From positions 15,746 through 39,563 of the forward strand of contig NW_002061000.1 in the NCBI RefSeq assembly GCF_000150275.1: a DNA stretch of 23,818 nt, written 5' to 3'. The DNA comes from Trichoplax adhaerens (taxonomy: Eukaryota; Animalia; Placozoa). The translations under genes were made by a program, and so were the position numbers. The notes under the pieces were generated by a model. That model did not search any database. It was given only the letters and a program-made list of their open reading frames with translations, and was not told the DNA's origin. This document shows positions 1 through 23,053 of this stretch, one piece after another; position 1 is the first letter of the stretch, and each line of letters begins with the position of its first letter.

Positions 1-60
1 TTTCACAATATCCATCGACATAAATACATCGATGACACCGTTGCCTCAATTCCAAGAACT
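1..60 (+). CDS. LRR exon 1 (partial, starts before window)
   Basis: Frame 2: FTISIDINTSMTPLPQFQE-L; phase-2 donor ct|GTAAGA at 61, like all other LRR exons. Confidence 0.65.
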
Positions 61-6000: not shown

Positions 6001-9000
6001 TACTAATTATCTGCCAGAATACATCTGAGAGTGACTGTATCTACGAGTACGAGTATGTACAAGACTTACGTAATCTAACAAATCTTTATTTCCTACTAGA
6101 CTTCTGAAAATTTTTGATCTGTATTATTACAGTAAGAAAATGTCATGACATATGTTATAAGAATTATTAGTGCAGTGGCACAATTATAACCTAGTCCAAG
6201 TTTAGAAATGTACTTTCAGATAATATCGTGAGGCAAATAGCCATGGGTAAATATCATGAAAATGCATTCCCTTTCTTCCTTCAATTACATCAGCGTAACA
6301 TCACTTACGTTCTTAGAAATTTTTGCTAATAATTCAAATTATTTTCTCATAAATATAGGGATCTTTGCGACAATGCGTTTAAAGAATTTCAAGATCCAAG
6401 AGCTAATTATACAACACCAGCATTTCGAAGTCTTCGATCAATGTAAGTGGGACGATAGTAAAATTATAAGACATGGCTTATAAATCCAAGAGGGAATCTA
6501 AATATCTTTCATTCACAGCTATTTTTATAATTAGAAGCAATATTAAAATTATTATTTCTATTGAATAAGTGTAAGAATTATTTTATTGTATTTTTGTTAC
6601 GTTAGAAAAACCAGCGGGAATTTTTACTATATCGGTAACTTGAGATACTTCGCCAATAAATCTTTAGAACAATTGTAAGTTTGCAAGACAGTCAGGAATT
6701 TATCTGTAATGGTTTCATTAGGCAAAAAACACTGAAATTACAAGTATATTATAATATTGGACCTAACGTACAATATTATTATTTAGTGCATTTAATAATA
6801 GCCCATCATAATTTTGATCATAATTTCATCAAGGGTGTTTTACTTTATACGGTAACATTTATTTTCTGCATACGTAGCTTTTGCAACAAGTGTGACATTC
6901 GGGAACTACAAAAATCCCATTTTATTGGATTACAGAAGCTAAAGTGGATGTAATTACCAGCAAAACACTTATCAATTTAACTGACTAGCAAAGACATTAC
7001 AGCTATAATTTTCTAAATCTGTTTCATTAATCAATTTTTAAAATTTATCATATATTATAATCTAAATTAACGCCTACTGTTGCAATACACGTGTAGACAT
7101 ATAAGAAACAATTTAATTCGATTTTTGCCGGAAAATTTTTTTCGGAATATGAAGCAGATACGATACATGTAAGGGCATTTATCTGTAACTAATATTAAAG
7201 GAATTTAGGCTTAAAGACTTTACATTATATTATCGCATAGCTGATTCAATGAAAAGATCGTTAGGTACACCAGTAACGCATAACGTTCATCATGGTTTAA
7301 TCTTATTATAAGTGAAATGGAATAATCTTATGAATAACTATCGCAATATTGGACTTAATCTGGACATTTATATTTAATTGTACAATTCAATATTATCCTA
7401 GAGATCTAACCCTTAATGGATTAACAGATTTTGACTTAGCTTCACTGGAGGGCCTGCCAAATCTATTGAGGGTGTTGGTATTAAAATCTTATATAAAATT
7501 CAGTAGATGTAATATTTGCAGTTACAATCACTTATAAAATCGATAGTGATTTACTATATTTTACGACAATAAAGTAGTCTACTATTGTAGTTACCGCAAT
7601 AATATTAACTACCAGTACCTAATAAAATAGAAGTAATTTGCTTTCTCTTGGAAAGTATCTTTACTCAGCTAATATTTGGTTTAAATAAATGGATCACTCG
7701 CCTTGATGCTGTCTTTAAATAAATAATCAAGCTTTAAATTTGAAACAAATATAAAAAATAGAATAAATCATTTTATCATAGTCTTTTAGGATATAATTAC
7801 CTAACTACGTTCAAAAACACTGCGTCTGCAAATTCAGTGATATCAATTGAAAATTTGTAAGTAAAATGTTACAACACATTTTTACATAAACCAGAATTTT
7901 AATTTGAGTTGGATATAATTAGTATGGTATATATAATTTGAGCTTACATTTTACACCTTTAATTTTTTTCCTTACAAATCTTTAGCTATGCTCCGGATAA
8001 CTTTCTGACACATTTAAAACCTGGCTTGTTTTTTAATTTTCCTTATTTGAAGCTCCTGTAAGTAATTTCCGTTTATATTATATGCTGTGCTAAGATTCTT
8101 AGACTATAAATAATATATTAATTGTACGAATAATAATGACTTAAGACATTTTATAACAACATGTGACTTGAAAACTTTAAAATTCTAATCCTAATTATTT
8201 TCATAATTTACTTATTAGTTATAATAGCTTATAGATTTGAGAAATTAAAATTAGTAGCTAGCTTAGATATTATTCAGAAATAAAATTAAATAATGAACTG
8301 CTTACCTTCTTATGCGACATTGCAGCTATATATTTTGCTATTCGATCAATATTTTAAACTAATCCATGTCAATCCTAAAACATTTTAAACTAGCTACCTG
8401 CCTAATAATCGATTACATGCTCTGCCCTATCACTTATGTAACGGTACACAGTTGAAAACGTTGTAAGTTAAAAATATACATGAAAATATAAACTTTTAGA
8501 AAATAAATTAGCTAGTAATTCTATTTATGCATACTTAAACTTCACGTTACATTCAATTACAACAATTGTAGAGACGCTAGCGGAAATTTGATTAACAAAA
8601 TCAATCGGCAGCAATTTTCAGCATGCAAATACTTGAGAACAATGCAAGTATTTTTGTAGAAACGGCTATTTTATCATTAACCTTAATGCTATAAATAAAG
8701 TTAATGACCTGAAGCTCAGGCAGCTAATAATATACTCCCTCAATTTATAGTACTGTATTATAAATACTTTTGATATATAGTAATCTATCGTTACCTCAAT
8801 AGGAAGTCCGTGTTAGCTTAATTTACGTTTACAAAAAATCTTACAAATAACTATATGCATTGTATCATCACATGCATATCTGTTTATACCTCGCTACATT
8901 TACGTGGAGTAAACCTAATGAAATATCAAATACTGTGAATACTGAGTTTTTAATCACAAGGAATGAGCATGTGTAGCTTGATATCAAATATAGACTCCTA

Positions 9001-12000
9001 CCTATATAGTTCATATTAAATCTACTTTGTTTTATCAGCTTATATGTTTCATAAATACTATACTGTTGTTACAATGTTATACACTGTAATATCGAAATTA
9101 CGGTAGAAACATCTATGTTAGTGTGACGGAGTACAGACTCCGTCAATTAATTGCAGCGTTAGTTTTAGTAATTAGTAATTAGGATTTTATTAATTTGTAA
9201 TAACGTTTACTTATTAGGTATTCGATAATTATAACCTTGTTAGTAGTCTAGCTATACTTGTTGTAGACTCTGTGCAGAGTAGTGTACTTACAGAGGTGAC
9301 AAGTAATATTCACACATAGTAATTTCTGTTACTTTGTGCCGAGCCTTTGATTGTTAATTGGCTCTTGGTTAGTTTGTAACTCATTAGTGTTGTTTACGCC
9401 GTCTGCCATACTAAATCATATAGACAGTCGGCTATACAAAAGCTATATACTTTTAGAGTTATTTATCTGAGCTGTGCACCGAGTGCAACCGAGCTAGGGT
9501 ATATAAAGCCCGGTGCTCTCATTAGCTGTAGAGTTGACGATTGACTGTGTAGTATACGCGTATAGTTAGAGTAGTCTTGGATGTCAAGACTACCTTGGTT
9601 TAATAAACTATTTTAAAAGCCTAAGTCTAGTCTACACTTAGCCCGTTGGGGGCATATTTGGCTATTGCAGCCTTAGTATTCGTACAGGTAGGTATTCGTA
9701 CAGATTCAAAGACCCAGGTTTCCTGGTCGTGGGCTGAACACGACAGTTAGGATAATTTTGTTGATTTACCCTTACATGAAGAGTTTCTAATTTAGATATG
9801 TGATATTTAAATATAGCACTAGCTAGTGATATATACAGCCTACTGAAATTAGCAGTTTAATTATGGAATCGACAATAATCTTCTTACAATTCAAATTACT
9901 GCGATTGTAATTTACTTATGGTAGATTGTAGATTATCGTAGAAATGTTCCGTGAGAGGACATATTGTAATCTGACAATTTTGCATTAGTCATTCGATGTC
10001 TATTTTCGTGTCACAAACCAGCTTCGTGACAAGGATAACGTAAAACAAATCTCTAAATTACTATAGTCTCCGGGATTCAGTATCCCTACTCACAAGAATT
10101 TAGACGCCTTTGATTCTACGTTAAACAACTATACAATTGAGAACTGCTTTATTCAACTATCTGACGGGCTTATATACCCTTCTACAGCAGCTAACATTCA
10201 CAAGTCATCTTATAAAAATACTTGGGTGAGAACATCTACTAACTAGTTTTTCACAGTCGGACTACAATATGTCCATTCACAGAATCATTTCAGCACACAT
10301 TACAGCACAGCAATAAATTTACAGTAACACATTTATAATTAGAGTAATTCCTATTGTAAGGAACTAGATGTAATATATTATCACTATATTATATTAACCA
10401 AATTTAGATAACTATTTCTTCACGGTAGTTCGTACCGTGACACTTCGTAAATACTGTTGTCTTCATTAGGTAGCGGTAGATAAAATCAGCTTTAAATTCA
10501 TTATCAGTTTTCAAGCTTAATATTACTAACTCGGATGTCTTTGCTATCGTAAAAGAGTATGTAAATGCGATAAATCGTATAATAAAGTTAGTTCTTATGA
10601 TTAGTGTTTAACGTAAGATACGAGGCATCTAAGTCTTTTTGTAGTCTACTAGTATAGGAAATGTGTTCCTGAAAGAGTAGATACTGCTGCCTGATACGTG
10701 GTTGAGGGAATCGACTGATTGATCGTGCATTATGTTATCTTGTTGCAAAGCTGTTTTGTAACAACTGCATTGTTTCAAATTGCTTATTTATGTGATAAAT
10801 GTCAAAAATACTATTACATCATTCCTAGAATGAATTTTGTTCGCAACAGATAGTATTATAGATTCTTAGAATTTAAATTGGGCAACTTTGGGTATGCTCT
10901 AGATAAATTAAATGAAATTCTAATTCTAAGTGAGTACAAATACCGTAATTTCTAAGCGATAGAAACGGAGATATATAGTCACTTAATTTATAACGTGGAA
11001 AATAATTGTGTTGGATACCTAACTTAAATTTAGGTAAATGATTGCTAGGTATACAGTAGATATTTCGTGAATTCACCGGGTATTTCGCAAAATTCACTAG
11101 TATCTGTAGTATATGACAACAGCTGCGTGACTAACAAATCCAATTTAATTATTTCTCGCTTAGAAATTTATCAGGAAATAAGATTACTACCGTCAGTACG
11201 AAAACCTTTATCGATTTGAAGGCATTGAAAGAAATGTATGCCATTTTACTTTTAAATTACAAGATACCGAAACAAAATTGAAGTTGCAAATGTTAGTAAT
11301 ATTTAATAATTTCTTCATTAGCCGACTAAATAACAACTCTATAGATCGCATTCCACTTCATACGTTCTCTTCAGCTTCACCATTAACCATTGTGTAAGTA
11401 AAAGACCTAAAGATAACTTAAAGTACCTGTTTTTGTCTATACAAAGTGCTTGTCAAATGTTTAAAGATTGGAAAAAATTCGTGACCTACCCTACTAAAAG
11501 ATACTAACGTTATCAGTCGCTAAACATTTCATACGCATCTGCATGTATTAAGTACGCTAAATTATTAGGATCATTCTTGATTTTTAAGCTTGCTCACTTA
11601 AAGCCGAGCTCTATTTTTGCTTATTATAGCTACAATTTTAACAATTAATGTGGTTTACTATTGTAAATTATGTTTAAAATTTCTACAAAATGATTGAAAT
11701 CAGCTCTAACTTAGCAGATTACTGAAACGGGTATACTACTTGTATAGAAAATATCTAATTCCTACGACTGACAACAATATTAGGATAATCTAAAATGTGT
11801 ATTCCTGTAATTCTATATTTAGGAATTTGGCCTTAAATAAGATTAATTTTGTTCATGAAAACGCCTTTGGGAATTTAGCAGTACTGCAGAACTTGTAATA
11901 ATATTGGCATAGACATCCATTGATATCTTTATACCTGTCATTACGTTCATACCGGCTACATCATCTAAGCATTATTATTTATTCTTAAGAGATTTATCTA

Positions 12001-15000
12001 GAAACCGACTGACGAAAATTACTGCGTCTTTATATGAAAATATTCCTTACTTAACTTATCTGTTGGTGAAATTAATATGCATTAAATTTTCTTCAAACTT
12101 TTATATAAAACTTAATTGATGCAGCTACAGTAATATAGTAGCGTTGAACATCTTATAATTCATCATTAAAATTTGAAACATAAAGGATTTTAAAGTGAAC
12201 GCAAAACATGGGCGTAGAATTCATTTTTGATTTCATATCTATTTTAAAAATATTACGCTTAAGTATTGTTTGTTTGGAGTCGCATTTTTCCAATAAGTCT
12301 AAGTATTTTTCAATTTTTGTGATAGAAGTTTGGCCTTAAACAGAATAGAATCAGTTCCTGACTTTGTGTTTGCAAATTTACAAGGTCTAGAAAGCCTGTA
12401 AGGAAATAATAGGCTATTTAATTAATGTAAATTTTTAAATTATGTATTAGCTACTCAATTGTTTGAGTAACAGTTTCTGAAAAAGTCTGTAATCTTTATG
12501 ATATTACTTTAATGTTAATTGATTTAAATTGTAATAAATGTAATTGTACAAACTTACTGAAATCTTAATTTAATTAGGTGGCTTGGAAATAAGAGGTTGC
12601 AGTATCTAAATCAACAAGCGTTCTATGGATTAAGTCAGCTAAAACACCTGTACGATAAATTGCAATGTACTTTCATGTGATAATAATGCCATTAACGTGA
12701 TGAATATTTCTTGTTCATAAGTTTCTTATAGCGATTGTGACGTGTTTTCTAGAGAAATTGGCTATTGTCGAAATCTACGAACATTAAACTTCAAACTTTT
12801 TCATAATTTGAAATCACTCTTTGCTCTGTAAATATCCTAAATAAAAGTAAAAGAAAAGTTAAATGCATAGAATTTTTTCTTATTTACATCTAAATAAGAC
12901 AAGCCGTTTCAGCTTCGGTTTAAAAATCGAAATTAGTAACGCGAGCAAATGAAACAGTATCTAATTAAATTGATAAATGAGTTTCATTAAATATCTTACC
13001 GATAGTTATTTAACAATACGAGAGCATAGATTATTGAATCCTTTGTAGAATTTAGCATATGTTATCTATGGCTAGCATCTACCGCAACTTCCATTCTTTT
13101 TCATGTATTTAATTAGATATCTGAGATTTTGCAATCTCAATGCTACAGTATTCGAAGCGTCATCATTTCAACAGTTATCGGGATTGAGAGCCTTGTAAGT
13201 ATGTTATGGATATGAAATAGTTATAAATAAATATGTTATATGTTCTTAGAGTTGTCGAAGAATTTACGTGTATGAAAAGTCGATGATAGCATCAGCTTGA
13301 TAGGACTTTAAGTTGGTAAATCGCAATATGATGCCATAATTGAATTCCTACCTATATTCTCACTAATCCAAAGTTCTTAATTTATTCTTTTGCCTATTCG
13401 GGACAGTCATTTAAATTTTCTAGTTATGTCTGATTTTTGATAAGTTAACAAAATGAAATCAGCGCGCTTAAATTATTAAAATGTACGATTAATCTAGGTA
13501 TCTAGATGGCAATGATTTATCCAATATCGATGAATCCATTTTCAAGAATATGGCATTTCACAGCTTGTTAGTAATTAATGATTGCACCTTTGTTCGCTAC
13601 TGTAACAAATAATAGGTTAATTTTATCACGGATTAGTTGCATATTTAAAATTAAAATAACTGAATTTAAATAAAAAACATATTCTGAAGGTTTAAAAACT
13701 TATTATCCTGAAAATCGGCTGATTGTTACGTTATAAATTTCTGCCATTTCAATTTTATATTTGATGTTGTCATTCATAAGGGGTATAAGCTTTACCAACC
13801 TTCCTCCTACCAAAATTAATTTCATTATATCTCTGGGCGTAGATCTTACTAATCTGTAAGTATTTGTTCGCTCAAATTATCAAAGGTAAAATCGGTAATA
13901 AAGCAGTCTATATCATTTTTCTTACTAATATCCAGAATATGCTTTCATTAATTAAGGACTTCATTAAACATTTTATCATGTACTCAAGGTTCTTTATTTT
14001 TTAGACATCTGAACGGCCTTCGATTAAAGAATTTCATAAATGCTTCCTCAATTTCTAATAAAATCCAACACCTGTAAATGAAAATCATTTTCACAAATTG
14101 TTACCATTCCGCTGGTAACCTGCATTAAATTTGCTCACTAAGGCTACTATTCAGCCTTTTTAAACGTAGTCTAAGCCTAAACTAATACGATATACTCCCA
14201 GTTATAATCATGTAATAGCATCCTGCTATTGTTATTGATTCGCCTACATAACCAAAAATAGAAACAGTACAAGTGCGCAGTTTTATCGTATTAGCTGCCT
14301 ACTTCACTTCTGCAATCAACTGAGATATGTACACTCCTATAGGTATTAGAATTAAAGCTGCTGTAAGTGTATTATAGCATAGATAATCTGAGGAGAAAAA
14401 ATAGGTTATATTAAACAAGGGCACTAAAAATGTCTCAAACAGTAGCTCTTATAAACCTAGTCTATGCAAGTTAATTAGCGTCACAAATTTGCATTGCGAC
14501 AAAATAACATAATTTACGATCATTAAGTCACATCCTTAAATCATGCATCAAGGGATACTATCCACTCGATCAGAAATAATACTCAGTTGTCAACAGACAA
14601 GATTCAAGTGTCTCATAGTCGATATTAAACATAGATTCTCAAGAAATCTCTTTGTTATACGATAAATCTTAATTTATACTGTAAACGGTATACATTTCTT
14701 CAATAATTGAGGAGTCCTAGTTTACCCTTTTAGTAGTGAAGCCTTTCAGCAAATGAGATAGTGATCTTTTGCGTCATTATGTAATCAAGACAGCAAACGT
14801 TAACGAACATACCAGTAGATATCAAATGACAATACAAAATAGTCAGATTATATTAACTCCATATTGCATACACAGAATACGTATTCTCGAGTTAATCACA
14901 TTAAACCTTAAGTTAGCTTCTATCCCAACAATTTAAACTATAAGTAATGTAGATTCCGATTATTCTCAGCTGCTAAATATACAAGTAAGTATTAATTTCA

Positions 15001-18000
15001 GCACTGCTGTTTCATAATAATCTAATGCTATATTATGACACAATATATCTAAATTAAAGGCTAACTAAATTAAGTTAATTAGCCCTTAACATTGCTTCAA
15101 CATAGATATCATTATTCTTATTCATCATTGTACCTCATAATACTACACCAATTACCTAAATTGTGGCGCAATTTACTATACCGATGCGCAAAGCTTAAGG
15201 ATTTACTATGGGAATAGTATTCTATTCTACAAATTAGAATTTCATCTATACAAAATTATGGCAAACATCCTTATGTATCCGAACTCGTATCTAGAATTTT
15301 TAAAACAATGATAGTAGTAATCATTTAACCAATACGATTATATAAGCTAATAGTATAAGAAAATATAACTAAGAATTGTTTGATTGGTAAAGACAATCAT
15401 CATTACATGCTAATTCAAGTAACTGTGTGTAACATTGATTACCAACGACGCAACCTTAATAGAAATTATTCGTATTTCACGTAATTACAAACACATATTA
15501 AATACTTCGCTAGAATATACTTTATTTCATACTTGATGAAATCGACTGTACGCTTCGGTAAATGATAAAATGCTTATAGATATCTTATTACGCCAATAAG
15601 TTGTGGTCTACACGTATATCTCTCGAATAATTGTTCCACGTGGTCGTTTCGTATCTGCTTAAAATTATTAGAAATTTGGATGACAATAGTATAAGCTCCG
15701 TCCACGCATCATCGGCGCCAATACTTCGTGGTCTTAAGGAACTGTATGAAAATTGAATTAGCTAACTATAAAATCTAGATGTTACCTTCATTTATTAACT
15801 TGTTCAATATTGAAATCTATACTGTAATATGTATCTAGCACTCATCAAACCTATTTTAAATATAAAGTTGCTATAGCTTAGTAAATTCTAATACTATCAG
15901 TACCTATACTTATAAATCTAAGGTAAATAAGCATGCTTAACTTGCCAAATTTTTACTGAATTTTTTAGCTATATAAACCGAAATAATCTGGGAGATGAGG
16001 AATATGTGAAGTTGTTAACCTTAACTCCTAACCTGAAGATATTGTTAGTGAAAGATAATTAATAAGAATACAGATACATTTAAATTTACAAGTTAAACAC
16101 TTTAAAATAATACTGCCATGCGTAAAAGTAACTTTATTTAGCCGTATTTCTACATTATGTATATTAAATTTCAAGACATCGCCGTACTTGATACGGTAAT
16201 TCTTGGGTACATAAAATTCATAATATGTAGTTTATTAATAAAACTCCTTTAATGTGTCCTTAATAAGTGAAGCAACATGCATTAAAGATACTCAAAAGCT
16301 GGTTAAAAATTAAAATTTTTATCGATGCTTTAATTTAATTATAGGTTCCTAAGCAATAATAACCTTTCTGAAATCTGTCCAAAATTCCAGTCTTCAATTG
16401 CCTTTTCAAACATAATAATTCTGTTCGTATCTAAATTCGTATACCTTATAGAGAAAGCTATAAGCTTCTGTTAGCCTCCTTTCTTTATCCAAACTTGATA
16501 AAAATTAACAAATTTCAAAAAGGAGCATCGATCACAGTAGAACTTATCCATAATATTTTACCAACAAATAAAATTCTATATGCTGAGAAATGCGTATATT
16601 ACACCCTTAGATAAAACAGTAGAATTTTCCATTCTAAAATCTTTATAATTCATGAATGATCTTAAAGACTTATGTGACTTTAAAATTTTACTATCGGTTA
16701 GAGTGTACATGCTTATTGAGTAATAGTAGCCGTTTTATAGCTACCACACTATAAATTATCTAGAAATGTACTGATGATGATTTGTTAACGACTTCTAACA
16801 TATTTTTATTTATAGCTTATAATATCCATTTGCAATAAGATATACTAGGCCTAGAACTCACAATATCCCTTTCTCTAAATTAACTCTAGAGATTTAATTA
16901 AAGATCGTTAGGCCTATCCAACAGTAACACAATACTACTAACAGCCAATGATAGGTTTTGAATTAGCAATTTATTAACTCTTTCCAAGTCTTGATATCCG
17001 AGACCGTATACGATTTGCCTGACATTAATTATAAATGAGTATTTGTTATAATCAATTTCAATCTGTCTCAGATTTAAAAAATATTAACTATTGAACTACG
17101 AAGCTTAACATATTAACAACTGAATAGATACATACTTCTTCAATATCATCTTATACTAATAACCAATGTCTACGCAGCATATCACAGTATAAATTAGCTA
17201 GATTTTTAACAAAGTTTGACGTCAGTTTAGCCTAGAAGAGATATGTAGTTTACTGGGACCTCTTAGTAAAAGAGATTGGCATTATACTGACTTATACTGC
17301 AGGTTGATATCGTAGAGTACTAGCCTAACAGTAGGTTCCTAGCGTGGAAATTTTTGTAGTAGCTTTTATTTTTCTCATTACGAATATCAGCTTGTAACTA
17401 CTAGTATCTTTTTTTCTTTGTCAGTATATGAAATTGTTTAATTTCATGCTTAATTAATGGTTCATTTCGATCAGTTATTAATTAAATCGTAATATTTTAT
17501 CGACGAAGCGAGTAAACAAGGCTTCGATGGTATTTGCTGTAGTAGCCAACATCTAAATTAAAAACTTTATGTGTAGTAATCAGTTCGCATAATCATAATT
17601 TACGTATAAAAAAATATCTTAAATTTATTCAGTGCATTTATTCACTGACTTATTTTGATAATTTGCTGTCATACAAATGAAATTTTCGTTTCGTAATGCA
17701 CATGATATATATTTCTAGAAGTAAATAGAGTGTGGTAGTATATTACAATATGTATAGTTCAGGAAGATGACTATCTTAATTTAAAGTTATATTAGATTTT
17801 TAAAATGCTTGATTTATTATAATTATTACCGGTAACGCCTGTGAAATATCTCAAAGAAACATTCTATTAAACATGAAATAGTAATTAAATTTTAAAATTA
17901 ATAGAAATCTCAATGGCAATAACGTCGAAAAATTAGATAGCTATTGCTTTTGGAATATGCCTGAACTCAATAGCCTGTAAGTCAAATTTTACAATTTGTA

Positions 18001-21000
18001 GTAACTAATTCTAGTAATGCAGTAACTGAAATTGACGTTCGGTCTCAGATGATAATTTAAAATTTAGCATCAGAAATAAAGAAATTTCGGATGCCTGCAA
18101 TATCTAAAATATAGCTGATAATTGAAATGGTTTTCTCAATTTATATTTTACGTATAATTATTTGCAGGTTTTTGATAGATAATCCTATAATAACTTTTAA
18201 TGACCGTTCTTTTGGTGGTATAGAAGGCTTTCGAAGTTTGTAAGTACGCACACATGAGTACAGTAATATCTCCTATTCTTACGTAGTTAGATAAGTATGT
18301 TCTATAATTAAAACTGAATATTAGTAATTACTTTTACCAACATATGTACGGTTGCTTTTTCGACACTGCGTGACTCTTTTAGCGTAATTTATCACGTTCA
18401 GTATACTACATTACGATATACATACCATTGATTGTCTCTGCAATCAAATTAATTCTATTTCGCTAATTCACGTATCCAAAAATTTATTCATAACATTAAG
18501 TTAACGATAAGAAAAGGCCTCGGTTTTATTAGGCCGATAAATTTATTGTAATTCTATTGCTTAATATCTAGTTGACATAGCGTACTTCTAAGTGGATAAA
18601 TGGTTAGATGAAGATTTTAAAACAAAAAGTTGTATACGTACTTTTAACTCAAGGCTACTTAGAATAATAGCAACGGAGTATGGAAAGTAAAAGTTCCCAC
18701 AGTTTCTTCCTCTAAATGCTACAACGAAACGATTTATAAAGCGATCATGCAGAAATAAATTTTCCTAAATTTAATGTTTCTCTCTACCTACCAGAAGTCC
18801 ATGCAACAGTTTATACTCGACGTTGAGTTCACAAAATTATTTGTTAAAAGATATTTAGAATCAATACAATTCATTTTATTTCATTTTTTTAATTCATGGC
18901 TGTAATAATTATACCTATGTTACGAAGCAAAGCACCGTACATGCTAATTAAATAGATTTTGTTAGTATTTAGCTAATGGATCATATTGGTAATTGATAAT
19001 TGAAATTAAGAATATTAATATCTAGATTGCTAGACAACAAAGGCATAAATGCATTTTGCAATTAATTAGTAGAGCCTATATAGATATTAATAATGGTGGT
19101 ACGTTAGCATCCGCTGCGATTATCGTACAAAGCCTCAAGGGTCTAATTGGCTATTAATTCGTTATTGCTAATTAAAGTTGTCTACGTATTTGTATCTATA
19201 GTAAACTATATAGTTCATTGAGGCTTGTCCTCCTATACAAATTATGTAAATCTTATATTGTCAAGTTACTATGTGTGCACCAATAATTTAGTGGAAGGGT
19301 ATAAAAGGAAGAGCGAATGCTCAGTTCCTGAGTTCTTTATTAGATCGTGTACGAGAAGGTACTCGGCTACTCTATTAATAAATACTATACTAATCTTGTA
19401 GAACAGTCTTATCCCTGTGTGACCGTAAGTAGTATATAACTACCATACAGTAGAACTCCTGGTGTAGTGGAGCAAGGCATAAGTAATCTATTAGTTTAGT
19501 GTAGTAGTTCATAACATAAATTTGTGACAACCTAGTAAAGGTCGAATTAAGCATAAATTAGCCTTGGAACAGCTATCTTCTTCTAATTTGGATTTTTCCT
19601 CGTCTATTAACTATAGACATTCGACCCGTGAATATTTGTGTTGCATTGTGCCATCCACAGTGATTGTGTGTAGACCAAATCCGAATCAATTTAGCTTATC
19701 TACATGCTATGATATTCTATCGCATGATTTATTGCGAATATTTATCTGGGTAATTGGTATAATTTCAGTCGTTGGTAACATGATTTCTATAAGGTGGCAT
19801 TCTCAAAAAAAATCTTCTAAAATACTTGGAATAGTAGAAATACTATTAATTAACTTATNNNNNNNNNNNNNNNNNNNNNNNNNNNNNNNNNNNNNNNNNN
19901 NNNNNNNNNNNNNNNNNNNNNNNNNNNNNNNNNNNNNNNNNNNNNNNNNNNNNNNNNTCGCTTATCTAGTAAACTACTATTCTAGCGTTAGTAACTTTTT
20001 GGATAACATCAATCACATTGTCTGGATTACCAATTATTTATAGCATAGATCAACCATCAATTAATCGTCTATATTCTAGTAATAGTGCATGCTTGCCTGG
20101 TAATTTTAATAATCCATATTTATTAACATGGCTATTATGTTATGCTGGATTAACCTTCGTCGTTTGGATTCTTATTGCAATCATGTATGTCGCAATTCTA
20201 TCGACACTAGCAAATTCACGGAAAAAGGCTCATAGATGTTTATCAAAGAATGATAAGATTATTCGGGCTAAAATGATTATTATCGTAGCAACGGATTTAA
20301 TTTGCTGGCTACCATTATATTCAGTATTAATTCGAGGTTTTGGTTCTGGATTAGACACGCATTCATTGCCCTTTATTGCGGTTTTATCATTGCCACTAAA
20401 TTCTTGTATTAATCCAATTCTTTATACGATCTGTACAAGTACTTTTATCAATTACATCAATTTGGCTATTGGAAAGTTAAATTGCTGTTCATGTTTAGCA
20501 TTCTCTCGATCAATTCGTGAGTCAACTCAAGGTAGGTAACTACAAGCAAGTAAGTTAAGGCTTATTTTTCAAGTAAGGTGATTGATGTACTTCTGAAACC
20601 TTATTACATACGATTTTTAAAACTATTATGCAATAGTATACGTCTCAATAACTACAAAACAGTGTATAGCTATTAAACTTGCATACTTTCACAATGAAGT
20701 GTATTCCTTAGTTAAACGATAACAAAATAATTCTGTTTTAGATATTTATACCGGCTCAATTCATCCATCACATGTCATCGCGCTCTCCAGTAATCCTGAT
20801 CTATCTAAGGTAATCTTTTTGGATGATCGACGAGAAATTTTTTACGTTCAGAACCAAAAATCTTACACACTTGATTTTGCCTAACATAGTTATTCCTTAT
20901 TTCTTATTGAAAACCATAAATGATCTTGGCTTCAGAAAGATTTATTTTAAAATCTTTAATATTCAACTCAATCAAAAATTTTATTCGTCTAATATTTGTT

Positions 21001-23053
21001 TTAAGTATTGTATAATCTGAACTGGATCAGTAGCATTTACGTTACTCCATATAATGACCATTGCTAGACCGAAAACACGGTAATGACTCTTAAGCAATGA
21101 GCGAAACAAATACATATGACAATTATGTGGCATGGTTAGTTCTTTCTTTATGAAATAAATGCTAGATTTAACTATTCTAGTATTTCGAAAGAAGTTCAAT
21201 CAGTGATGAATAATTCTTTGCACATAATCAGTTTAATTATGGTAGTCTGGTATTCTTGTAAATTACAAAATGACAAAAGTTTCTGAAATTTCATTACTTT
21301 TTTACTAAGATTTATACAAGGTATATGTCTATCATTTATTTATTACACTAAATATTATCTATCACTAGTAGTATATAACACTTAGGTAAAGTAAGTTTTA
21401 ATATAAACTCATATGAAAATATTTAACTTCGATGCAAGGTTTACATTAAAGTCAAATTACCTCATAATCACAAAGCGAATAAATTGGGTTGGCTAAAATT
21501 TTACAGCGCGAAAGATAGTTTGCCATGGGAAAAGGAGATAGTATTTTATTCGCACATCAAATCGGAAGACTGCAAATTAGTAAATATTTTGAGCTTTTGG
21601 TGGCACTGTGATGGAAGTAAATGTAGAGTCGAAATAGATGGTATCAAGAAATTATTTCCGGATGAATTGTAGGTCTTATGTTTTCAGTTTTATAATAGGT
21701 TATATACCATATGTATTCATGCAGGTATATTTAAAAGACCTATTCTTTTGCAGCATGACATGTTACACAGCAGACGCAAATGATATTATGCTATTGAGTA
21801 ATTTCATCCGTTTGCAATCCAATCACCTAACATCAGAGCAGCTTTTGCAAATTCTTATTAATATTATTCAAGCAATTCAATCTATGCACCTGAATAATAT
21901 CGTCCATGGATCAGTTAATACCGATGCTGTTGTTCTTCTTATTCCGCCAAAGGTACAAGAAAGTACATTTGACGGTAGATATTTGAAAATGCAACAATCC
22001 TATAAGATTAAAGTTTTTATTAGTTTATTTTGATCGTACCAGTAATTTGTACTTGGTTTACCTATAAAACTAATATCTCTAATTTTCTGCCTGAATGAAG
22101 CCTTAACCAATGGCATCACCTTCAGAATTGGCTTATTAAATAATTCTCACTATCTTTAGCCTACTTGCAGATAAAGTTAGGATTAGAAATTTACAGATTC
22201 ATGAATCTGCAGTTCCTCTCAATATTGTAAAGAAATAGTTTAGAGTCACTAAAATTTTTTAGTGGGCGAGTATTTCAGAGATATAACGTTTCTGTTCAAT
22301 CAAATATCATCCTCACTACGGATCAGTTAAATTTCTATCATGATTTATTAACGCTCTTGTCGGTCCTTTATAGAAAAGTCACGATAATAGCGATAACTTA
22401 TTGCTTATTTAATGTTATATACCTAGGAACCGATTACCGCCCTATTAGGCAAATTTTCAAATACGACGATATTTAAAAATGATCTCCATGAAATATGCAG
22501 AGATCGATACCGTCAATTACTGAGAGTAGATATTTCAGACATTGCATCGCTATGTAATGAATTAAGTTCATACTGCCAAACGCAAATCGATCAAATAAAC
22601 AAGAGCCAACTACAACCAGATAAAATAATGCAAGCTGAATCTTGGAGATCGATGAACAAGAAAGTAAGCACATAAGAGTGCAATATATTGTATTAACTAC
22701 ACATAACTGATTTCTCATAACAAATACTTAGTGAAAGCAGTAATAATAATAACTCAACCTTGAGTATTACGCATACATTATAATTTAGTTAAAGCAACAG
22801 TAAATTGCCTTCGTAAATTATACAGCACTTATTATATTACATGTCCATGACTAGCTGCACTAGCATAATTGAACAAAATGCCAAGATCATCACGAAGAAG
22901 CTGTCAAATATTTTTTGATGTTCAATAATGTAATTAACATTTATTAAATTTTAGTTACGTACTGTCAAAGATGCCATCAATGATCGATTACAAGAAGATA
23001 GAGAACCAAAGCAAATTCTAGCTGATCTGTGGGCCATTGTCAGCAATAATTAA
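1..23053 (+). CDS. Spliced gene (>=42 exons, 5' end outside window): LRR-containing GPCR (type C LGR / RXFP-GRL101-like 7TM) with >=36 LRRs and a C-terminal pseudokinase domain
   Basis: join(<1..60,956..1027,1638..1709,2046..2111,3178..3255,3338..3409,3515..3586,4398..4469,4577..4648,4755..4826,4889..4960,6359..6442,6606..6674,6878..6949,7097..7168,7402..7473,7782..7856,7986..8057,8394..8462,8572..8643,11164..11235,11322..11393,11823..11894,11990..12061,12326..12397,12578..12649,12753..12827,13117..13194,13498..13566,13781..13855,14005..14073,15672..15743,15969..16043,16345..16422,17905..17976,18168..18239,19617..20531,20742..20809,21439..21668,21754..21952,22427..22663,22955..23053). Introns are GT..AG (one GC..AG) and phases chain without a stop, except next to the N gap. 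Stop TAA at 23051..23053. Confidence 0.88.
956..1027 (+). CDS. LRR exon 2 (72 nt)
   Basis: tatAG|..FLDNTLLEEIPGELFELFKHAII..|GTAAGT. Confidence 0.9.
1638..1709 (+). CDS. LRR exon 3 (72 nt)
   Basis: aAG|..NCNSVNFSSDKGKSLSVLSNLQRL|GTACGT. Confidence 0.8.
2046..2111 (+). CDS. LRR exon 4 (66 nt)
   Basis: cAG|..DITGSQIHPNYTFSHHQLLAHL|GTGAGT. Confidence 0.75.
2527..3091 (-). mobile_element. Solo-LTR-like element, family A copy 1 (565 bp), in intron 4
   Basis: Termini TGTCAC..GTGACA; perfect 5-bp TSD GAAGA (2522..2526 / 3092..3096); clear similarity to 10009..10442; TATA-like GGGTATTTAAGC then AATAAA on the - strand (2699..2669). Confidence 0.82.
3178..3255 (+). CDS. LRR exon 5 (78 nt)
   Basis: tttctAG|..TINNLMTRNLIIRRELFQGLLKLKYL|GTAAGT. 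Confidence 0.9.
3338..3409 (+). CDS. LRR exon 6 (72 nt)
   Basis: SISFNHIQALKNNSFPFLPSLHDL, AG/GTATGT. Confidence 0.92.
3515..3586 (+). CDS. LRR exon 7 (72 nt)
   Basis: QLKVNNISTIEAYSFTRLPNLRKL, AG/GTAAGC. Confidence 0.95.
4398..4469 (+). CDS. LRR exon 8 (72 nt)
   Basis: SLTRNNLKIIIKNTLNSLLNLKEL, AG/GTATGT. Confidence 0.93.
4577..4648 (+). CDS. LRR exon 9 (72 nt)
   Basis: HLESNQISSIEENAFIGMKNLNLL, AG/GTAAGA. Confidence 0.95.
4755..4826 (+). CDS. LRR exon 10 (72 nt)
   Basis: FLESNQIINLKENTFMGLPNVQEL, CAG/GTAAGA. Confidence 0.95.
4889..4960 (+). CDS. LRR exon 11 (72 nt)
   Basis: HLRENKVQQFSMNHFNKIPSLVYL, AG/GTAAGT; preceded by a 62-nt intron. Confidence 0.93.
6359..6442 (+). CDS. LRR exon 12 (84 nt, elongated repeat)
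   Basis: DLCDNAFKEFQDPRANYTTPAFRSLRSI, AG/GTAAGT. Confidence 0.9.
6606..6674 (+). CDS. LRR exon 13 (69 nt, atypical repeat)
   Basis: KTSGNFYYIGNLRYFANKSLEQF, AG/GTAAGT. Confidence 0.85.
6878..6949 (+). CDS. LRR exon 14 (72 nt)
   Basis: FCNKCDIRELQKSHFIGLQKLKWI, AG/GTAATT. Confidence 0.92.
7097..7168 (+). CDS. LRR exon 15 (72 nt)
   Basis: HIRNNLIRFLPENFFRNMKQIRYI, AG/GTAAGG. Confidence 0.95.
7402..7473 (+). CDS. LRR exon 16 (72 nt)
   Basis: DLTLNGLTDFDLASLEGLPNLLRV, AG/GTTGGT. Confidence 0.9.
7782..7856 (+). CDS. LRR exon 17 (75 nt)
   Basis: LLGYNYLTTFKNTASANSVISIENF, AG/GTAAGT. Confidence 0.85.
7986..8057 (+). CDS. LRR exon 18 (72 nt)
   Basis: YAPDNFLTHLKPGLFFNFPYLKLL, AG/GTAAGT. Confidence 0.95.
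8394..8462 (+). CDS. LRR exon 19 (69 nt)
   Basis: YLPNNRLHALPYHLCNGTQLKTL, AG/GTAAGT. Confidence 0.95.
8572..8643 (+). CDS. LRR exon 20 (72 nt; GC donor)
   Basis: DASGNLINKINRQQFSACKYLRTI, AG/GCAAGT at exactly the 72-nt phase-2 position. Confidence 0.88.
9122..9745 (+). mobile_element. Solo-LTR-like element, family B (624 bp), in intron 20
   Basis: Termini TGT..ACA; perfect 5-bp TSD GTTAG (9117..9121 / 9746..9750); TATA motif GGGTATATAAAGCCC 9497..9511; AATAAA 9602..9607; 3' part visibly more GC-rich than the flanks. Confidence 0.8.
10009..10442 (-). mobile_element. Solo-LTR-like element, family A copy 2 (434 bp), in intron 20
   Basis: Termini TGTCAC..GTGACA; TSD TTTCG/CTTCG (1 mismatch; 10004..10008 / 10443..10447); shares cgtaaaacaaatctctaaattactatagtctccgggatt with copy 1; GGGTATATAAGCCC and AATAAA on the - strand (10179..10148). 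Confidence 0.8.
11164..11235 (+). CDS. LRR exon 21 (72 nt)
   Basis: NLSGNKITTVSTKTFIDLKALKEI, AG/GTATGC. Confidence 0.95.
11322..11393 (+). CDS. LRR exon 22 (72 nt)
   Basis: RLNNNSIDRIPLHTFSSASPLTIV, AG/GTAAGT. Confidence 0.95.
11823..11894 (+). CDS. LRR exon 23 (72 nt)
   Basis: NLALNKINFVHENAFGNLAVLQNL, AG/GTAATA. Confidence 0.95.
11990..12061 (+). CDS. LRR exon 24 (72 nt)
   Basis: DLSRNRLTKITASLYENIPYLTYL, AG/GTTGGT. Confidence 0.93.
12326..12397 (+). CDS. LRR exon 25 (72 nt)
   Basis: SLALNRIESVPDFVFANLQGLESL, AG/GTAAGG. Confidence 0.95.
12578..12649 (+). CDS. LRR exon 26 (72 nt)
   Basis: WLGNKRLQYLNQQAFYGLSQLKHL, AG/GTACGA. Confidence 0.93.
12753..12827 (+). CDS. LRR exon 27 (75 nt)
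   Basis: EIGYCRNLRTLNFKLFHNLKSLFAL, AG/GTAAAT. Confidence 0.92.
13117..13194 (+). CDS. LRR exon 28 (78 nt)
   Basis: YLRFCNLNATVFEASSFQQLSGLRAL, AG/GTAAGT. Confidence 0.93.
13498..13566 (+). CDS. LRR exon 29 (69 nt)
   Basis: YLDGNDLSNIDESIFKNMAFHSL, AG/GTTAGT. Confidence 0.93.
13781..13855 (+). CDS. LRR exon 30 (75 nt, atypical)
   Basis: GISFTNLPPTKINFIISLGVDLTNL, AG/GTAAGT. Confidence 0.85.
14005..14073 (+). CDS. LRR exon 31 (69 nt)
   Basis: HLNGLRLKNFINASSISNKIQHL, AG/GTAAAT. Confidence 0.88.
15672..15743 (+). CDS. LRR exon 32 (72 nt)
   Basis: NLDDNSISSVHASSAPILRGLKEL, AG/GTATGA. Confidence 0.93.
15969..16043 (+). CDS. LRR exon 33 (75 nt)
   Basis: YINRNNLGDEEYVKLLTLTPNLKIL, AG/GTTAGT. 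Confidence 0.92.
16345..16422 (+). CDS. LRR exon 34 (78 nt)
   Basis: FLSNNNLSEICPKFQSSIAFSNIIIL, AG/GTTCGT. Confidence 0.88.
17905..17976 (+). CDS. LRR exon 35 (72 nt)
   Basis: NLNGNNVEKLDSYCFWNMPELNSL, AG/GTAAGT. Confidence 0.95.
18168..18239 (+). CDS. LRR exon 36 (72 nt, last LRR)
   Basis: FLIDNPIITFNDRSFGGIEGFRSL, TGCAG/GTAAGT. Confidence 0.95.
19617..20531 (+). CDS. Exon 37: Cys-rich LGR hinge plus rhodopsin-class 7TM domain (most of TM2, all of TM3 and most of ICL2 in the N gap)
   Basis: ctatAG| hinge EYLCCIVPSTVIVCRPNPNQFSLSTCYDILSHDLLRIFIWVIGIISVVGN (RXFP/GRL101-type hinge into TM1); TM4 TTILALVTFWITSITLSGLP; ECL2 YSSNSACLP; TM6 IVATDLICWLP; TM7 LPLNSCINPILYT; phase-1 donor caag|GTAGGT at 20532. 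Confidence 0.93.
19859..19957. other. Assembly gap (99 N) inside the 7TM exon
   Basis: Run of n characters. Confidence 0.99.
20742..20809 (+). CDS. Exon 38: linker and start of kinase-fold N-lobe (degenerate Gly-loop region)
   Basis: ttttAG|(D)IYTGSIHPSHVIALSSNPDLSK|GTAATC; phase 1 to 0 fits both neighbours. Confidence 0.82.
21439..21668 (+). CDS. Exon 39: kinase-like subdomains I-IV
   Basis: VYIKVKLPHNHKANKLGWLKFYSAKDSLPWEKEIVFYSHIKSEDCKLVNILSF..; beta3 Lys at 21496, alphaC Glu at 21535; donor tt|GTAGGT at 21669. Confidence 0.85.
21754..21952 (+). CDS. Exon 40: kinase-like subdomains V-VIb
   Basis: ttttgcAG|..LSNFIRLQSNHLTSEQLLQILINIIQAIQSMHLNNIVHGSVNTDAVVLLIPPK|GTACAA; matches the LHxxxIVHRDLKxxNILL pattern with substitutions. 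Confidence 0.88.
22427..22663 (+). CDS. Exon 41: kinase-like subdomains VII-X
   Basis: cctAG|EPITALLGKFSNTTIFKNDLHEICRDRYRQLLRVDISDIASLCNELSSYCQ..SWRSMNKK|GTAAGC; ALLGKFS aligns with AKLGDFG and DISDIASLCNEL with DxWSxGxxxxEL. Confidence 0.82.
22955..23053 (+). CDS. Exon 42 (terminal): kinase-like subdomain XI and stop
   Basis: ttttAG|LRTVKDAINDRLQEDREPKQILADLWAIVSNN*; phase 0 fits. Confidence 0.75.
   Translation, partial: LRTVKDAINDRLQEDREPKQILADLWAIVSNN

What the first reader, a model, noticed from the sequence alone, without database searches (positions are those of the whole stretch)
19617..23053. LRR-GPCR fused to a C-terminal kinase-fold domain: a receptor joining GPCR and receptor-kinase architectures
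Seen in sequence: the 7TM exon has a donor (caag|GTAGGT, 20532) just before the stop used by the ORF track. Five downstream exons chain in compatible phases (1-0-2-0-0) with canonical splice sites. They add about 277 aa that run through kinase subdomains I-XI in order and end at TAA 23053. I see no separate start exon for this kinase part. Established: animal LGRs (glycoprotein hormone receptors, LGR4-6, RXFP1/2, GRL101) end in short tails with no enzyme domain, and GPCR-enzyme fusions are best known from protists (GPCR-PIP kinases of oomycetes and Dictyostelium). Inference: this is an LRR-7TM-pseudokinase receptor. It parallels plant LRR receptor kinases or Toll/IRAK signalling but uses a 7TM core, and I am not aware of a characterised example in animals.
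Basis: partly seen in the sequence, partly recalled or inferred. Interest (0 to 1): 0.92.

Follow-up and report, generated by a model that had tools for sequence, protein, structure and literature searches.

The report
LGR receptor with fused pseudokinase tail
This Trichoplax adhaerens gene encodes a hormone-receptor-type GPCR (leucine-rich repeats plus seven membrane helices) that most likely continues into a catalytically dead kinase-fold domain, an architecture shared by about 15 paralogues and not described in the papers I could search.

Summary
All six reader exons have the stated canonical splice sites and phases. Each translates to an exact stretch of one public protein, P0019 (747 aa, 'GRL101-like, partial', Trichoplax sp. 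H2), with one residue different in the last exon.

The genome is Trichoplax adhaerens. The 277-aa tail recurs at about 15 loci, always 1-4 kb downstream of the closest 7TM paralogues on the same strand. Every 7TM exon examined ends in a phase-1 donor just before its stop. Tail-bearing 7TMs form one clade (96/93). Tail dN/dS is 0.2-0.34.

The tail is a kinase fold. An AlphaFold model of P0019 gives pLDDT 82-96 there and Z 18 to IRAK4, plant receptor-like kinases, TGF-beta receptor I and pseudokinases NFR5 and IRAK3. The HRD Asp, catalytic Asn, DFG Asp and Gly-loop are lost, so it is a pseudokinase. Pfam stays below threshold.

Caveats:
- No RNA reads could be obtained, so co-transcription rests on gene structure and gene models.
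- The N gap hides about 222 nt of TM2-ICL2, not 99.
- One base is missing just after the gap, so this copy's frame is broken in the assembly.

GPCR-kinase fusions are known in protists and sponges. This scan already noted the same architecture on paralogous DNA. I class it as a new variant of a known kind.

The parts
13991..18261 (+). Last five LRR exons of the same gene (13991-14074, 15673-15753, 15970-16044, 17906-17977, 18169-18261)
   Evidence: tblastn of P0019 residues 1-131 gives 87-100% identity. LRR_8 is found on P0019.
19617..19858 (+). 5' part of the large 7TM exon: Cys-rich hinge end (HSTREYLCC), TM1, ICL1 and the start of TM2
   Evidence: Translation in frame from 19618 equals P0019 126-205. 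The acceptor is tatag|A at 19617.
19859..19957 (.). Assembly gap inside the 7TM exon. It hides about 222 nt (rest of TM2, ECL1, TM3 with its DRY-type motif, ICL2).
   Evidence: Flanks map to L017 positions 1402 and 1623. P0019 residues 206-284 lie between the flanks.
19958..20531 (+). 3' part of the 7TM exon (TM4-TM7 and the Cys-rich helix-8 region). One base is missing at the A-run 19971-19973, which shifts the frame.
   Evidence: Pfam 7tm_1 E=5.1e-13 on 19973-20530. Translation equals P0019 285-470. AAA here versus AAAA in three paralogues.
20532..20539 (+). Phase-1 splice donor GTAGGT and the TAA stop that would end a tail-less product if the intron were retained
   Evidence: A strong phase-1 donor sits just before the ORF stop in all 13 paralogues examined.
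20742..20809 (+). Tail exon E2: linker and beta-1 strand, with a degenerate Gly-loop
   Evidence: Equals P0019 472-493. It is 91% identical in four close paralogues. Model strand at 481-484.
21439..21668 (+). Tail exon E3: beta-2, beta-3 (Lys kept), helix C (Glu kept), beta-4 and beta-5
   Evidence: Equals P0019 494-569. There are 18 genome hits. The profile's only PDB hits are the TGF-beta receptor 2 N-lobe, E 2.8.
21754..21952 (+). Tail exon E4: hinge, helices D and E, degenerate catalytic loop (HGS in place of HRD), beta-7
   Evidence: Pfam PK_Tyr_Ser-Thr E=0.0028 at profile positions 88-134. The paralogue profile hits hundreds of kinases at this region, best E 3.3e-5.
22427..22663 (+). Tail exon E5: beta-8, DFG-equivalent (GKF), short activation segment, long helix-F-like helix
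   Evidence: Equals P0019 637-715. Alignment A3. Model helix 658-695.
22955..23053 (+). Tail exon E6: last C-lobe helices and stop TAA 23051-23053
   Evidence: Equals P0019 716-747 with one R/Q difference. Model helices 700-728 and 733-744.

Best explanation
The window holds the 3' half of a Trichoplax adhaerens GRL101/relaxin-receptor-like (type C) LGR gene. Its large 7TM exon does not end the coding region. A phase-1 donor two codons before the stop splices it to five further exons, which encode a roughly 277-aa intracellular domain with a complete protein-kinase fold of the TKL type (IRAK/Pelle/RLK and TGF-beta-receptor-like).

The domain keeps the beta-3 Lys and the helix-C Glu. It has lost the HRD Asp, the catalytic-loop Asn, the DFG Asp and the Gly-rich loop, so it is a pseudokinase.

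The fusion arose once in the placozoan lineage and expanded to about 15 loci.

Inferred mechanism: ligand binding at the LRR ectodomain rearranges the 7TM bundle and thereby repositions the tethered pseudokinase. The pseudokinase then acts as a regulated docking or dimerisation module, as IRAK3, NFR5, KSR, JAK JH2 or the kinase-homology domain of guanylyl-cyclase receptors do. It would act beside or instead of G-protein coupling.

Shown: gene structure, conservation, fold and loss of catalytic residues. Inferred: co-transcription in this species and the scaffolding role.
For: - Exons, splice sites and phases are as described.
- All exon translations match public protein P0019 of Trichoplax sp. 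H2 in order and abutting. That annotation is evidence-based MAKER with RNA-seq input, and the two genomes are 99.1% identical (PMC6057997).
- The species is T. adhaerens.
- E3, E4 and E5 recur only downstream of the roughly 15 closest 7TM paralogues, on the same strand and in the same order.
- All 13 examined 7TM exons have a strong phase-1 donor just before their stop.
- Five other public models (P0003, P0005, P0009, P0015, P0018) use that donor and an E2 of 21-24 residues (23-25 with the split codon).
- Tail-bearing 7TMs form one group, 96/93 support, and that group includes a contig of another organism.
- dN/dS is 0.15-0.34 for tail exons against 0.22 for the 7TM.
- Fold of paralogue P0001: pLDDT 78.8, and at least 500 Foldseek hits, every row shown a kinase, best E 2.3e-8.
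- Fold of P0019: tail pLDDT 82-96, and Z 18.2-17.2 with rmsd 3.2-4.4 over 213-223 residues to the cacao PR-1G kinase domain (a plant receptor-like kinase), NFR5, IRAK4, TGFBR1, IRAK1 and ActRII.
- The ESM atlas places tail residues 468-747 among kinase clusters at 0.95.
- UniRef names two tail-only models 'Protein kinase domain-containing protein'.
- Motif loss is seen in alignments A1-A3.
Against:
- I cannot tell whether P0019 itself had transcript support.
- The JGI models of T. adhaerens split some loci into a 7TM gene and a tail-only gene (P0001; P0004 stops after E3).
- In this assembly the 7TM exon is interrupted by the gap and a 1-nt frame shift, so this copy is not shown to be intact.
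- Sequence-level kinase evidence for this copy is weak: Pfam E 0.11 on P0019, and phmmer of P0001 against the PDB finds no kinase.
- The scaffolding role is inference only.
Confidence: 0.75

Rival explanations
1. Two genes rather than one. The kinase-like exons form a separate gene that has been co-duplicated with its LGR neighbour, and the joined models are prediction artefacts.
For: JGI predicted tail-only proteins: P0001, 271 aa with its own Met, and P0002. No RNA reads were available.
Against: - E2's open frame in the window has no Met.
- A strong phase-1 donor sits before the stop in all 13 7TM exons, and it matches the phase of E2 in six independent models.
- No complete tail lies away from a 7TM; the two orphans are fragments.
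- P0001's Met-start is simply the open frame upstream of the E2 acceptor. The H2 model P0015 joins the same locus to the 7TM.
Confidence: 0.07
2. The family is real, but this particular copy is a decaying pseudogene. The frame is broken after the gap, and there is a stop where paralogues read six more codons before their donor.
For: There is a 1-nt deficit at 19971-19973 with two stops in frame. TAA 20537 lies in a stretch that L017 and L018 read as coding. One clear pseudogene copy exists nearby in the family: L019, with stops in all exons.
Against: - The H2 orthologue P0019 is open throughout and identical in all exons but one residue.
- The deficit is in a homopolymer 14 nt from a gap edge of a Sanger-era assembly.
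- The upstream donor caag|GTAGGT keeps phase 1, and the H2 model uses it.
- dN/dS is 0.2-0.34.
Confidence: 0.1
3. The tail is an active, atypical kinase (as WNK or CASK proved to be) that phosphorylates the receptor or its partners.
For: The beta-3 Lys is kept in 11 of 14 copies and the helix-C Glu is invariant. The DF of DFG is kept in 2 of 12 copies. The whole bilobal fold is retained.
Against: The position of the HRD Asp is Asn, Ser, Cys, Gly, His or Phe in all receptor-linked copies, and the HRD Arg is Gly in 13 of 14. The catalytic Asn and the Gly-loop glycines are absent. The nearest structures include the pseudokinases NFR5 and IRAK3.
Confidence: 0.1
4. Alternative splicing gives both a tail-less LGR (intron retained, stop at 20537) and the tail-bearing form, so the pseudokinase is an optional module.
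For: In every paralogue a stop follows the donor within a few codons, so intron retention would give an ordinary LGR.
Against: There is no evidence either way. A stop soon after a donor is expected by chance in 30% GC intron sequence.
Confidence: 0.25

Closest known systems
Type C LGRs (GRL101, relaxin receptors RXFP1/2) of cnidarians, molluscs and vertebrates
   Same: LRR ectodomain, Cys-rich hinge and a rhodopsin-class 7TM. The best non-placozoan sequence hits are coral and Aplysia GRL101-like proteins. The best structural hits are TSHR, FSHR, LHCGR, LGR4 and RXFP1.
   Different: The six relatives checked end 30-105 residues after 7tm_1, so they have no room for a kinase domain. Here about 277 residues of kinase fold follow TM7.
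GPCR-TKL/K of acanthoecid choanoflagellates, oomycetes and amoebozoans, and GPCR-TK of choanoflagellates and sponges (PMC12716839; PMC5784254)
   Same: A 7TM receptor with a C-terminal protein-kinase domain in one polypeptide. Those fusions are thought to have arisen repeatedly, and none has been characterised functionally.
   Different: According to the paper, those 7TMs are not LGR or rhodopsin-class and cluster with no metazoan GPCR. Their kinase domains are recognised by Pfam/InterProScan. [quoted passage not shown] Here the 7TM is an LGR, the ectodomain is LRR and the kinase is degenerate.
Receptor pseudokinases of the RLK/Pelle-IRAK and STKR groups (Lotus NFR5, IRAK3, TGF-beta and activin receptors)
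   Same: They are the nearest structural neighbours of the tail, at Z 17-18. The helix-C motif W-x-x-E-x-x-F-Y resembles that of TGF-beta-family receptors. An extracellular binding domain coupled to a dead kinase that signals by docking is the shared logic.
   Different: Those receptors have a single membrane pass. Sequence identity is only 11-18%. No family-level sequence assignment reached significance.
Kinase-homology domain of membrane guanylyl cyclases, and JAK JH2
   Same: A catalytically impaired kinase fold used as an intramolecular regulator next to another signalling module.
   Different: This comparison is from my own knowledge and was not tested here. The partner module is different.

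Membership tests
Leucine-rich-repeat GPCR (LGR), rhodopsin class | Rhodopsin-type 7TM domain | tested here: met
   Pfam 7tm_1 E=5.1e-13 on window 19973-20530 and 1.1e-24 on orthologue P0019.
Leucine-rich-repeat GPCR (LGR), rhodopsin class | LRR ectodomain N-terminal to the 7TM in the same protein | tested here: met
   LRR_8 E=2.4e-12 on P0019. Its LRR residues map to window exons 13991-18261. Foldseek matches TSHR, FSHR and LGR4 at E down to 1.6e-12.
Type C / GRL101-like LGR | LDLa module(s) N-terminal to the LRRs | not tested
   Such modules lie outside my stretch. An earlier scan note (s1-752992) reports LDLa upstream, and I did not check it.
Eukaryotic protein kinase fold | Bilobal fold: five-stranded N-lobe with helix C, and a helical C-lobe | tested here: met
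   VIA-align Z 18.2-15.4 over model residues 471-747 with 198-243 aligned. The Foldseek hits shown for the paralogue model are all kinases.
Eukaryotic protein kinase fold | Pfam Pkinase or PK_Tyr_Ser-Thr above the gathering score | tested here: not met
   Scores are 12.2-21.7 bits against cut-offs of 23.1 and 31.7.
Active protein kinase | HRD catalytic Asp and catalytic-loop Asn | tested here: not met
   The window reads H-G-S-V-N-T-D-A. The Arg position is Gly in 13 of 14 copies, and Asp is present only in orphan fragment L035.
Active protein kinase | DFG Asp and a Gly-rich loop | tested here: not met
   The window has G-K-F-S. Asp is present in 2 of 12 copies. The E2 loop has no GxGxxG.
Active protein kinase | Beta-3 Lys and helix-C Glu | tested here: met
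   Lys is kept in 11 of 14 copies and Glu is invariant. The positions were assigned through the alignment to TGF-beta receptor 2, which is a weak alignment.
GPCR-TKL/K or GPCR-TK (choanoflagellates, sponges, oomycetes) | 7TM and kinase domains homologous to those families | not tested
   No sequences of those families were on hand. The paper says their 7TMs cluster with no metazoan GPCR, so common descent is unlikely. Only the architecture is shared.

The most novel reading that the evidence does not exclude
Placozoans have a lineage-specific clade of about 15 LGR-type rhodopsin GPCRs, each covalently fused to an IRAK/RLK/TGF-beta-receptor-like pseudokinase. This would be the first rhodopsin-class GPCR-kinase-fold fusion described in animals. 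It would link LRR ligand sensing through a 7TM core directly to kinase-scaffold signalling, possibly independent of G proteins.
Probability: 0.6. Interest if true: 0.75.

Novelty: new variant of a known kind. Interest (0 to 1): 0.68.

Why it matters
GPCRs and receptor kinases are usually treated as two separate solutions for signalling across a membrane. A conserved, selected and expanded family that welds an LGR to a kinase-fold module would show that the two were combined in an early-branching animal.

It would also give a natural test case for how a 7TM rearrangement can be read out by a tethered pseudokinase.

Finally, it bears on placozoan LGR catalogues. The 2022 review lists 46 LGRs without using the word 'kinase', and gene models of T. 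adhaerens split several of these genes in two.

Tried and rejected
- Joined model. The joined spliced model of the window was not sent to any search or fold tool. Exons were searched one by one by reference. The public protein P0019, which equals the spliced model, was used in its place.
- PDB profile searches. The E5 profile found nothing. The E3 profile found only TGF-beta receptor 2 at E 2.8. The top E4-profile hits are TALE repeat proteins, an artefact of a short 'LTPE..I' motif summed over repeats; the kinases follow.
- Other sequence searches. phmmer of P0001 against the PDB found no kinase. The profile of A4 was swamped by 7TM columns. A5, built from fragments only, aligned poorly and was dropped.
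- Tail-only word searches with P0019 and P0017 found only themselves or the T. adhaerens counterpart. These searches are limited by length and by exact words, so this is not evidence of absence elsewhere.
- E2 could not be found by tblastx in distant paralogues. It was located through the public models instead.
Full report
**What is in the sequence**

The window is 30% GC. It carries one-repeat LRR exons on the + strand, followed by a large exon with a rhodopsin-type 7TM domain. Pfam 7tm_1 scores E=5.1e-13 on 19973-20530.

- donor caag|GTAGGT after 20531, phase 1, two codons before TAA 20537-20539;
- E2 20742-20809;
- E3 21439-21668;
- E4 21754-21952;
- E5 22427-22663;
- E6 22955-23053, ending in TAA.

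All have AG acceptors and GT donors, and the phases run 1-0-2-0-0. The two split codons read GAT (D) and TTC (F).

**The gap**

The flanks of the N run 19859-19957 map to positions 1402 and 1623 of paralogue L017. There, the whole hinge-plus-7TM region is one open 390-aa exon, so the gap hides coding sequence and not an intron.

Residues 206-284 of the orthologous protein P0019 fall between the flanks. They cover the rest of TM2, ECL1, TM3 with its DRY-type motif, and ICL2. About 222 nt are therefore missing, not 99.

Fourteen bases after the gap, the window reads AAA where three paralogues read AAAA. This shifts the frame and produces the two stops seen there. It may be a read-end error of the assembly or a real lesion. 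Only reads can tell.

**Organism and orthologue**

A profile of E3 from 14 copies was searched against 1.84 billion proteins and found 14 hits.

P0019 (747 aa, NCBI 'G-protein coupled receptor GRL101-like protein, partial [Trichoplax sp. H2]') is the orthologue. Every reader exon translates to an exact substring of it, in order and abutting, with one R/Q difference in E6. It reads '...RESTQ-D-IYTGS...' across the 20531/20742 junction.

The H2 annotation is an evidence-based MAKER prediction with RNA-seq input, and the two genomes are 99.1% identical (PMC6057997). I could not see whether this particular model had transcript support.

I did not send the joined model of the window to any search or fold tool. 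Exons were searched singly by reference, and P0019 stood in for the joined protein.

**One gene or two**

The case for a single gene therefore rests on structure and conservation.

- E3, E4 and E5 recur at about 15 loci of the genome. They always lie 1-4 kb downstream of a 7TM exon, on the same strand and in the same order. These 7TM exons are exactly the closest paralogues (53-87% identity). The next-best 7TM exons (43% or less) have no tail.
- All 13 7TM exons examined carry a strong donor (mostly GTAAGT, GTGAGT or GTAGGT) in phase 1 a few codons before the stop.
- Five further public models (P0003, P0005, P0009, P0015, P0018) use that donor, then an E2 of 21-24 residues (23-25 with the split codon), then E3.
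- E2's open frame in the window has no Met.
- The only tail pieces away from a 7TM are two fragments, on C1404 (E4 plus a broken E5) and on C1385 (part of E3 plus E4).
- In a tree of the TM4-TM7 segment, the 12 tail-bearing rows form one group (96/93). The group includes a contig from another organism (ENA ERZ27263980) that also shows 7TM, E3 and E4 in order.
- Between the window and L017, dN/dS is 0.15-0.34 for the tail exons and 0.22 for the 7TM, while introns are 70-76% identical.

Against this, JGI's T. adhaerens models split some loci in two. One example is P0001, a tail-only model whose Met lies in the open frame upstream of the E2 acceptor.

**Is the tail a kinase?**

By sequence it is only faintly so:
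- Pfam PK_Tyr_Ser-Thr gives E 0.0028 on E4 alone and 0.11 on P0019. The best paralogues reach 20-22 bits against a cut-off of 23.1.
- phmmer of P0001 against the PDB finds no kinase.
- A profile of E4 hits hundreds of kinases at helix E and the catalytic loop, best E 3.3e-5, after an artefactual block of TALE repeat proteins.
- The E3 profile finds only the N-lobe of TGF-beta receptor 2, at E 2.8.

By fold the case is clear:
- The AlphaFold model of paralogue P0001 (pLDDT 78.8, pTM 0.77) gives at least 500 Foldseek hits at E<=0.001. Every row shown is a kinase, and the best E is 2.3e-8.
- The model of P0019 has pLDDT 82-96 over residues 510-747.
- An exhaustive structural search aligns residues 471-747 to whole kinase domains at Z 18.2-17.2, rmsd 3.2-4.4 Å over 213-223 residues. 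The top matches are the cacao PR-1G kinase domain (a plant receptor-like kinase), Lotus NFR5 (a pseudokinase), IRAK4, TGF-beta receptor I, IRAK1, activin receptor II and IRAK3 (a pseudokinase). Fifty further kinases follow, down to Z 15.4.
- Foldseek on the whole model lists TSHR, FSHR, LHCGR, LGR4 and RXFP1 first, then kinases.
- A language-model look-up of residues 468-747 lands in kinase clusters at 0.95.
- UniRef already labels two tail-only models 'Protein kinase domain-containing protein'.

The alignments span the tail from E2 to E6.

**Pseudokinase**

In the alignments of 12-14 copies:
- the beta-3 Lys is kept in 11 of 14 and the helix-C Glu is invariant;
- HRD reads H-G-(N/S/...), with Gly in 13 of 14 and Asp only in the orphan fragment L035;
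- the catalytic Asn is mostly absent;
- DFG reads (K/N/D)-F-(S/T), with Asp in 2 of 12;
- the loop in E2 has no glycine motif.

The window's copy reads HGS and GKF.

**How it probably works**

Shown: an LGR whose cytoplasmic end is a conserved, selected and catalytically stripped kinase fold.

Inferred: the 7TM rearrangement on ligand binding repositions the tethered pseudokinase. The pseudokinase then serves as a regulated docking or dimerisation surface for active kinases or adaptors, as other receptor pseudokinases do. An atypical active kinase is a less likely alternative, and a tail-less splice form may coexist.

**Comparison with what is known**

- The nearest non-placozoan relatives by sequence are coral and Aplysia GRL101-like receptors. 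The six I checked end 30-105 residues after the 7TM domain.
[quoted passage not shown] None has been characterised functionally (PMC12716839; PMC5784254).
- The 2022 review of placozoan LGRs lists 46 in T. adhaerens and never uses the word 'kinase' (PMC9545775).
- Other LGR and placozoan papers I searched do not mention the tail.
- The sequences themselves are public.
- This scan has already reported the same architecture on two other pieces of this genome. One of those notes says the tail occurs in many invertebrate phyla. My checks did not support that, but my searches were limited by length and by exact words.

**Verdict**

The thing is a new variant of a known kind, a GPCR-kinase fusion: it has a rhodopsin-class LGR core, a dead TKL-like kinase, and is specific to placozoans as far as tested. 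The main open points are direct RNA proof of the 20531/20742 junction and the integrity of this copy at the gap.

Noticed in passing
window 19971-19973: The A-run is one base shorter than in three paralogues (AAA versus AAAA), 14 nt after the assembly gap. This puts two stops in the 7TM frame. It is either a gap-edge sequencing error or a real frameshift.
   Followed up: partly
window 20532-20555: The donor has moved. Paralogues L017 and L018 read six more codons (GSQLQG) and splice at ggga|GTGAGT or ggga|GTAAGT. In the window that stretch holds TAA 20537, and the upstream caag|GTAGGT, also phase 1, is used instead, as in the H2 model.
   Followed up: partly
L035 (G000:C1404:1078770-1078949 and about 1.8 kb downstream): This is an orphan tail fragment (E4 plus a broken E5) with no 7TM or E3 within 10 kb. 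It is the only copy that keeps H-G-D...D-N in the catalytic loop.
   Followed up: partly
L032 (G000:C1385:243092-244189): This is a second orphan fragment, with part of E3 and E4 only. No 7TM lies within 11 kb upstream.
   Followed up: partly
L019 (G000:C1394:267863-270266): This tandem family member has stops in the 7TM exon and in E3, E4 and E5. It is a pseudogene copy.
   Followed up: no
G000:C1288 versus C1394:306-311 kb, and C1266 versus C1400:1540 kb: Small contigs repeat loci of large contigs with identical scores. They are probably uncollapsed haplotypes, so raw hit counts overstate the number of loci.
   Followed up: no
P0003 / P0017 (locus L030), between E3 and E4: Both public models carry 33 extra residues (FGTFYHPAHFW...) that no other copy has. 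This may be a mispredicted exon.
   Followed up: no
L037 (ENA ERZ27263980, contig k141_518824) and L036 (Logan SRR30664516): These contigs come from other samples and have 28-29% GC. They carry 7TM-E3-E4 (L037) and E3-E4 (L036) at 37-56% identity to the Trichoplax tails. L037 nests with L024 in the 7TM tree. The source organisms are not identified.
   Followed up: partly
window 1-18261: There are many more one-repeat LRR exons upstream than the partial H2 model P0019 includes, so the full receptor is much longer than 747 aa.
   Followed up: no
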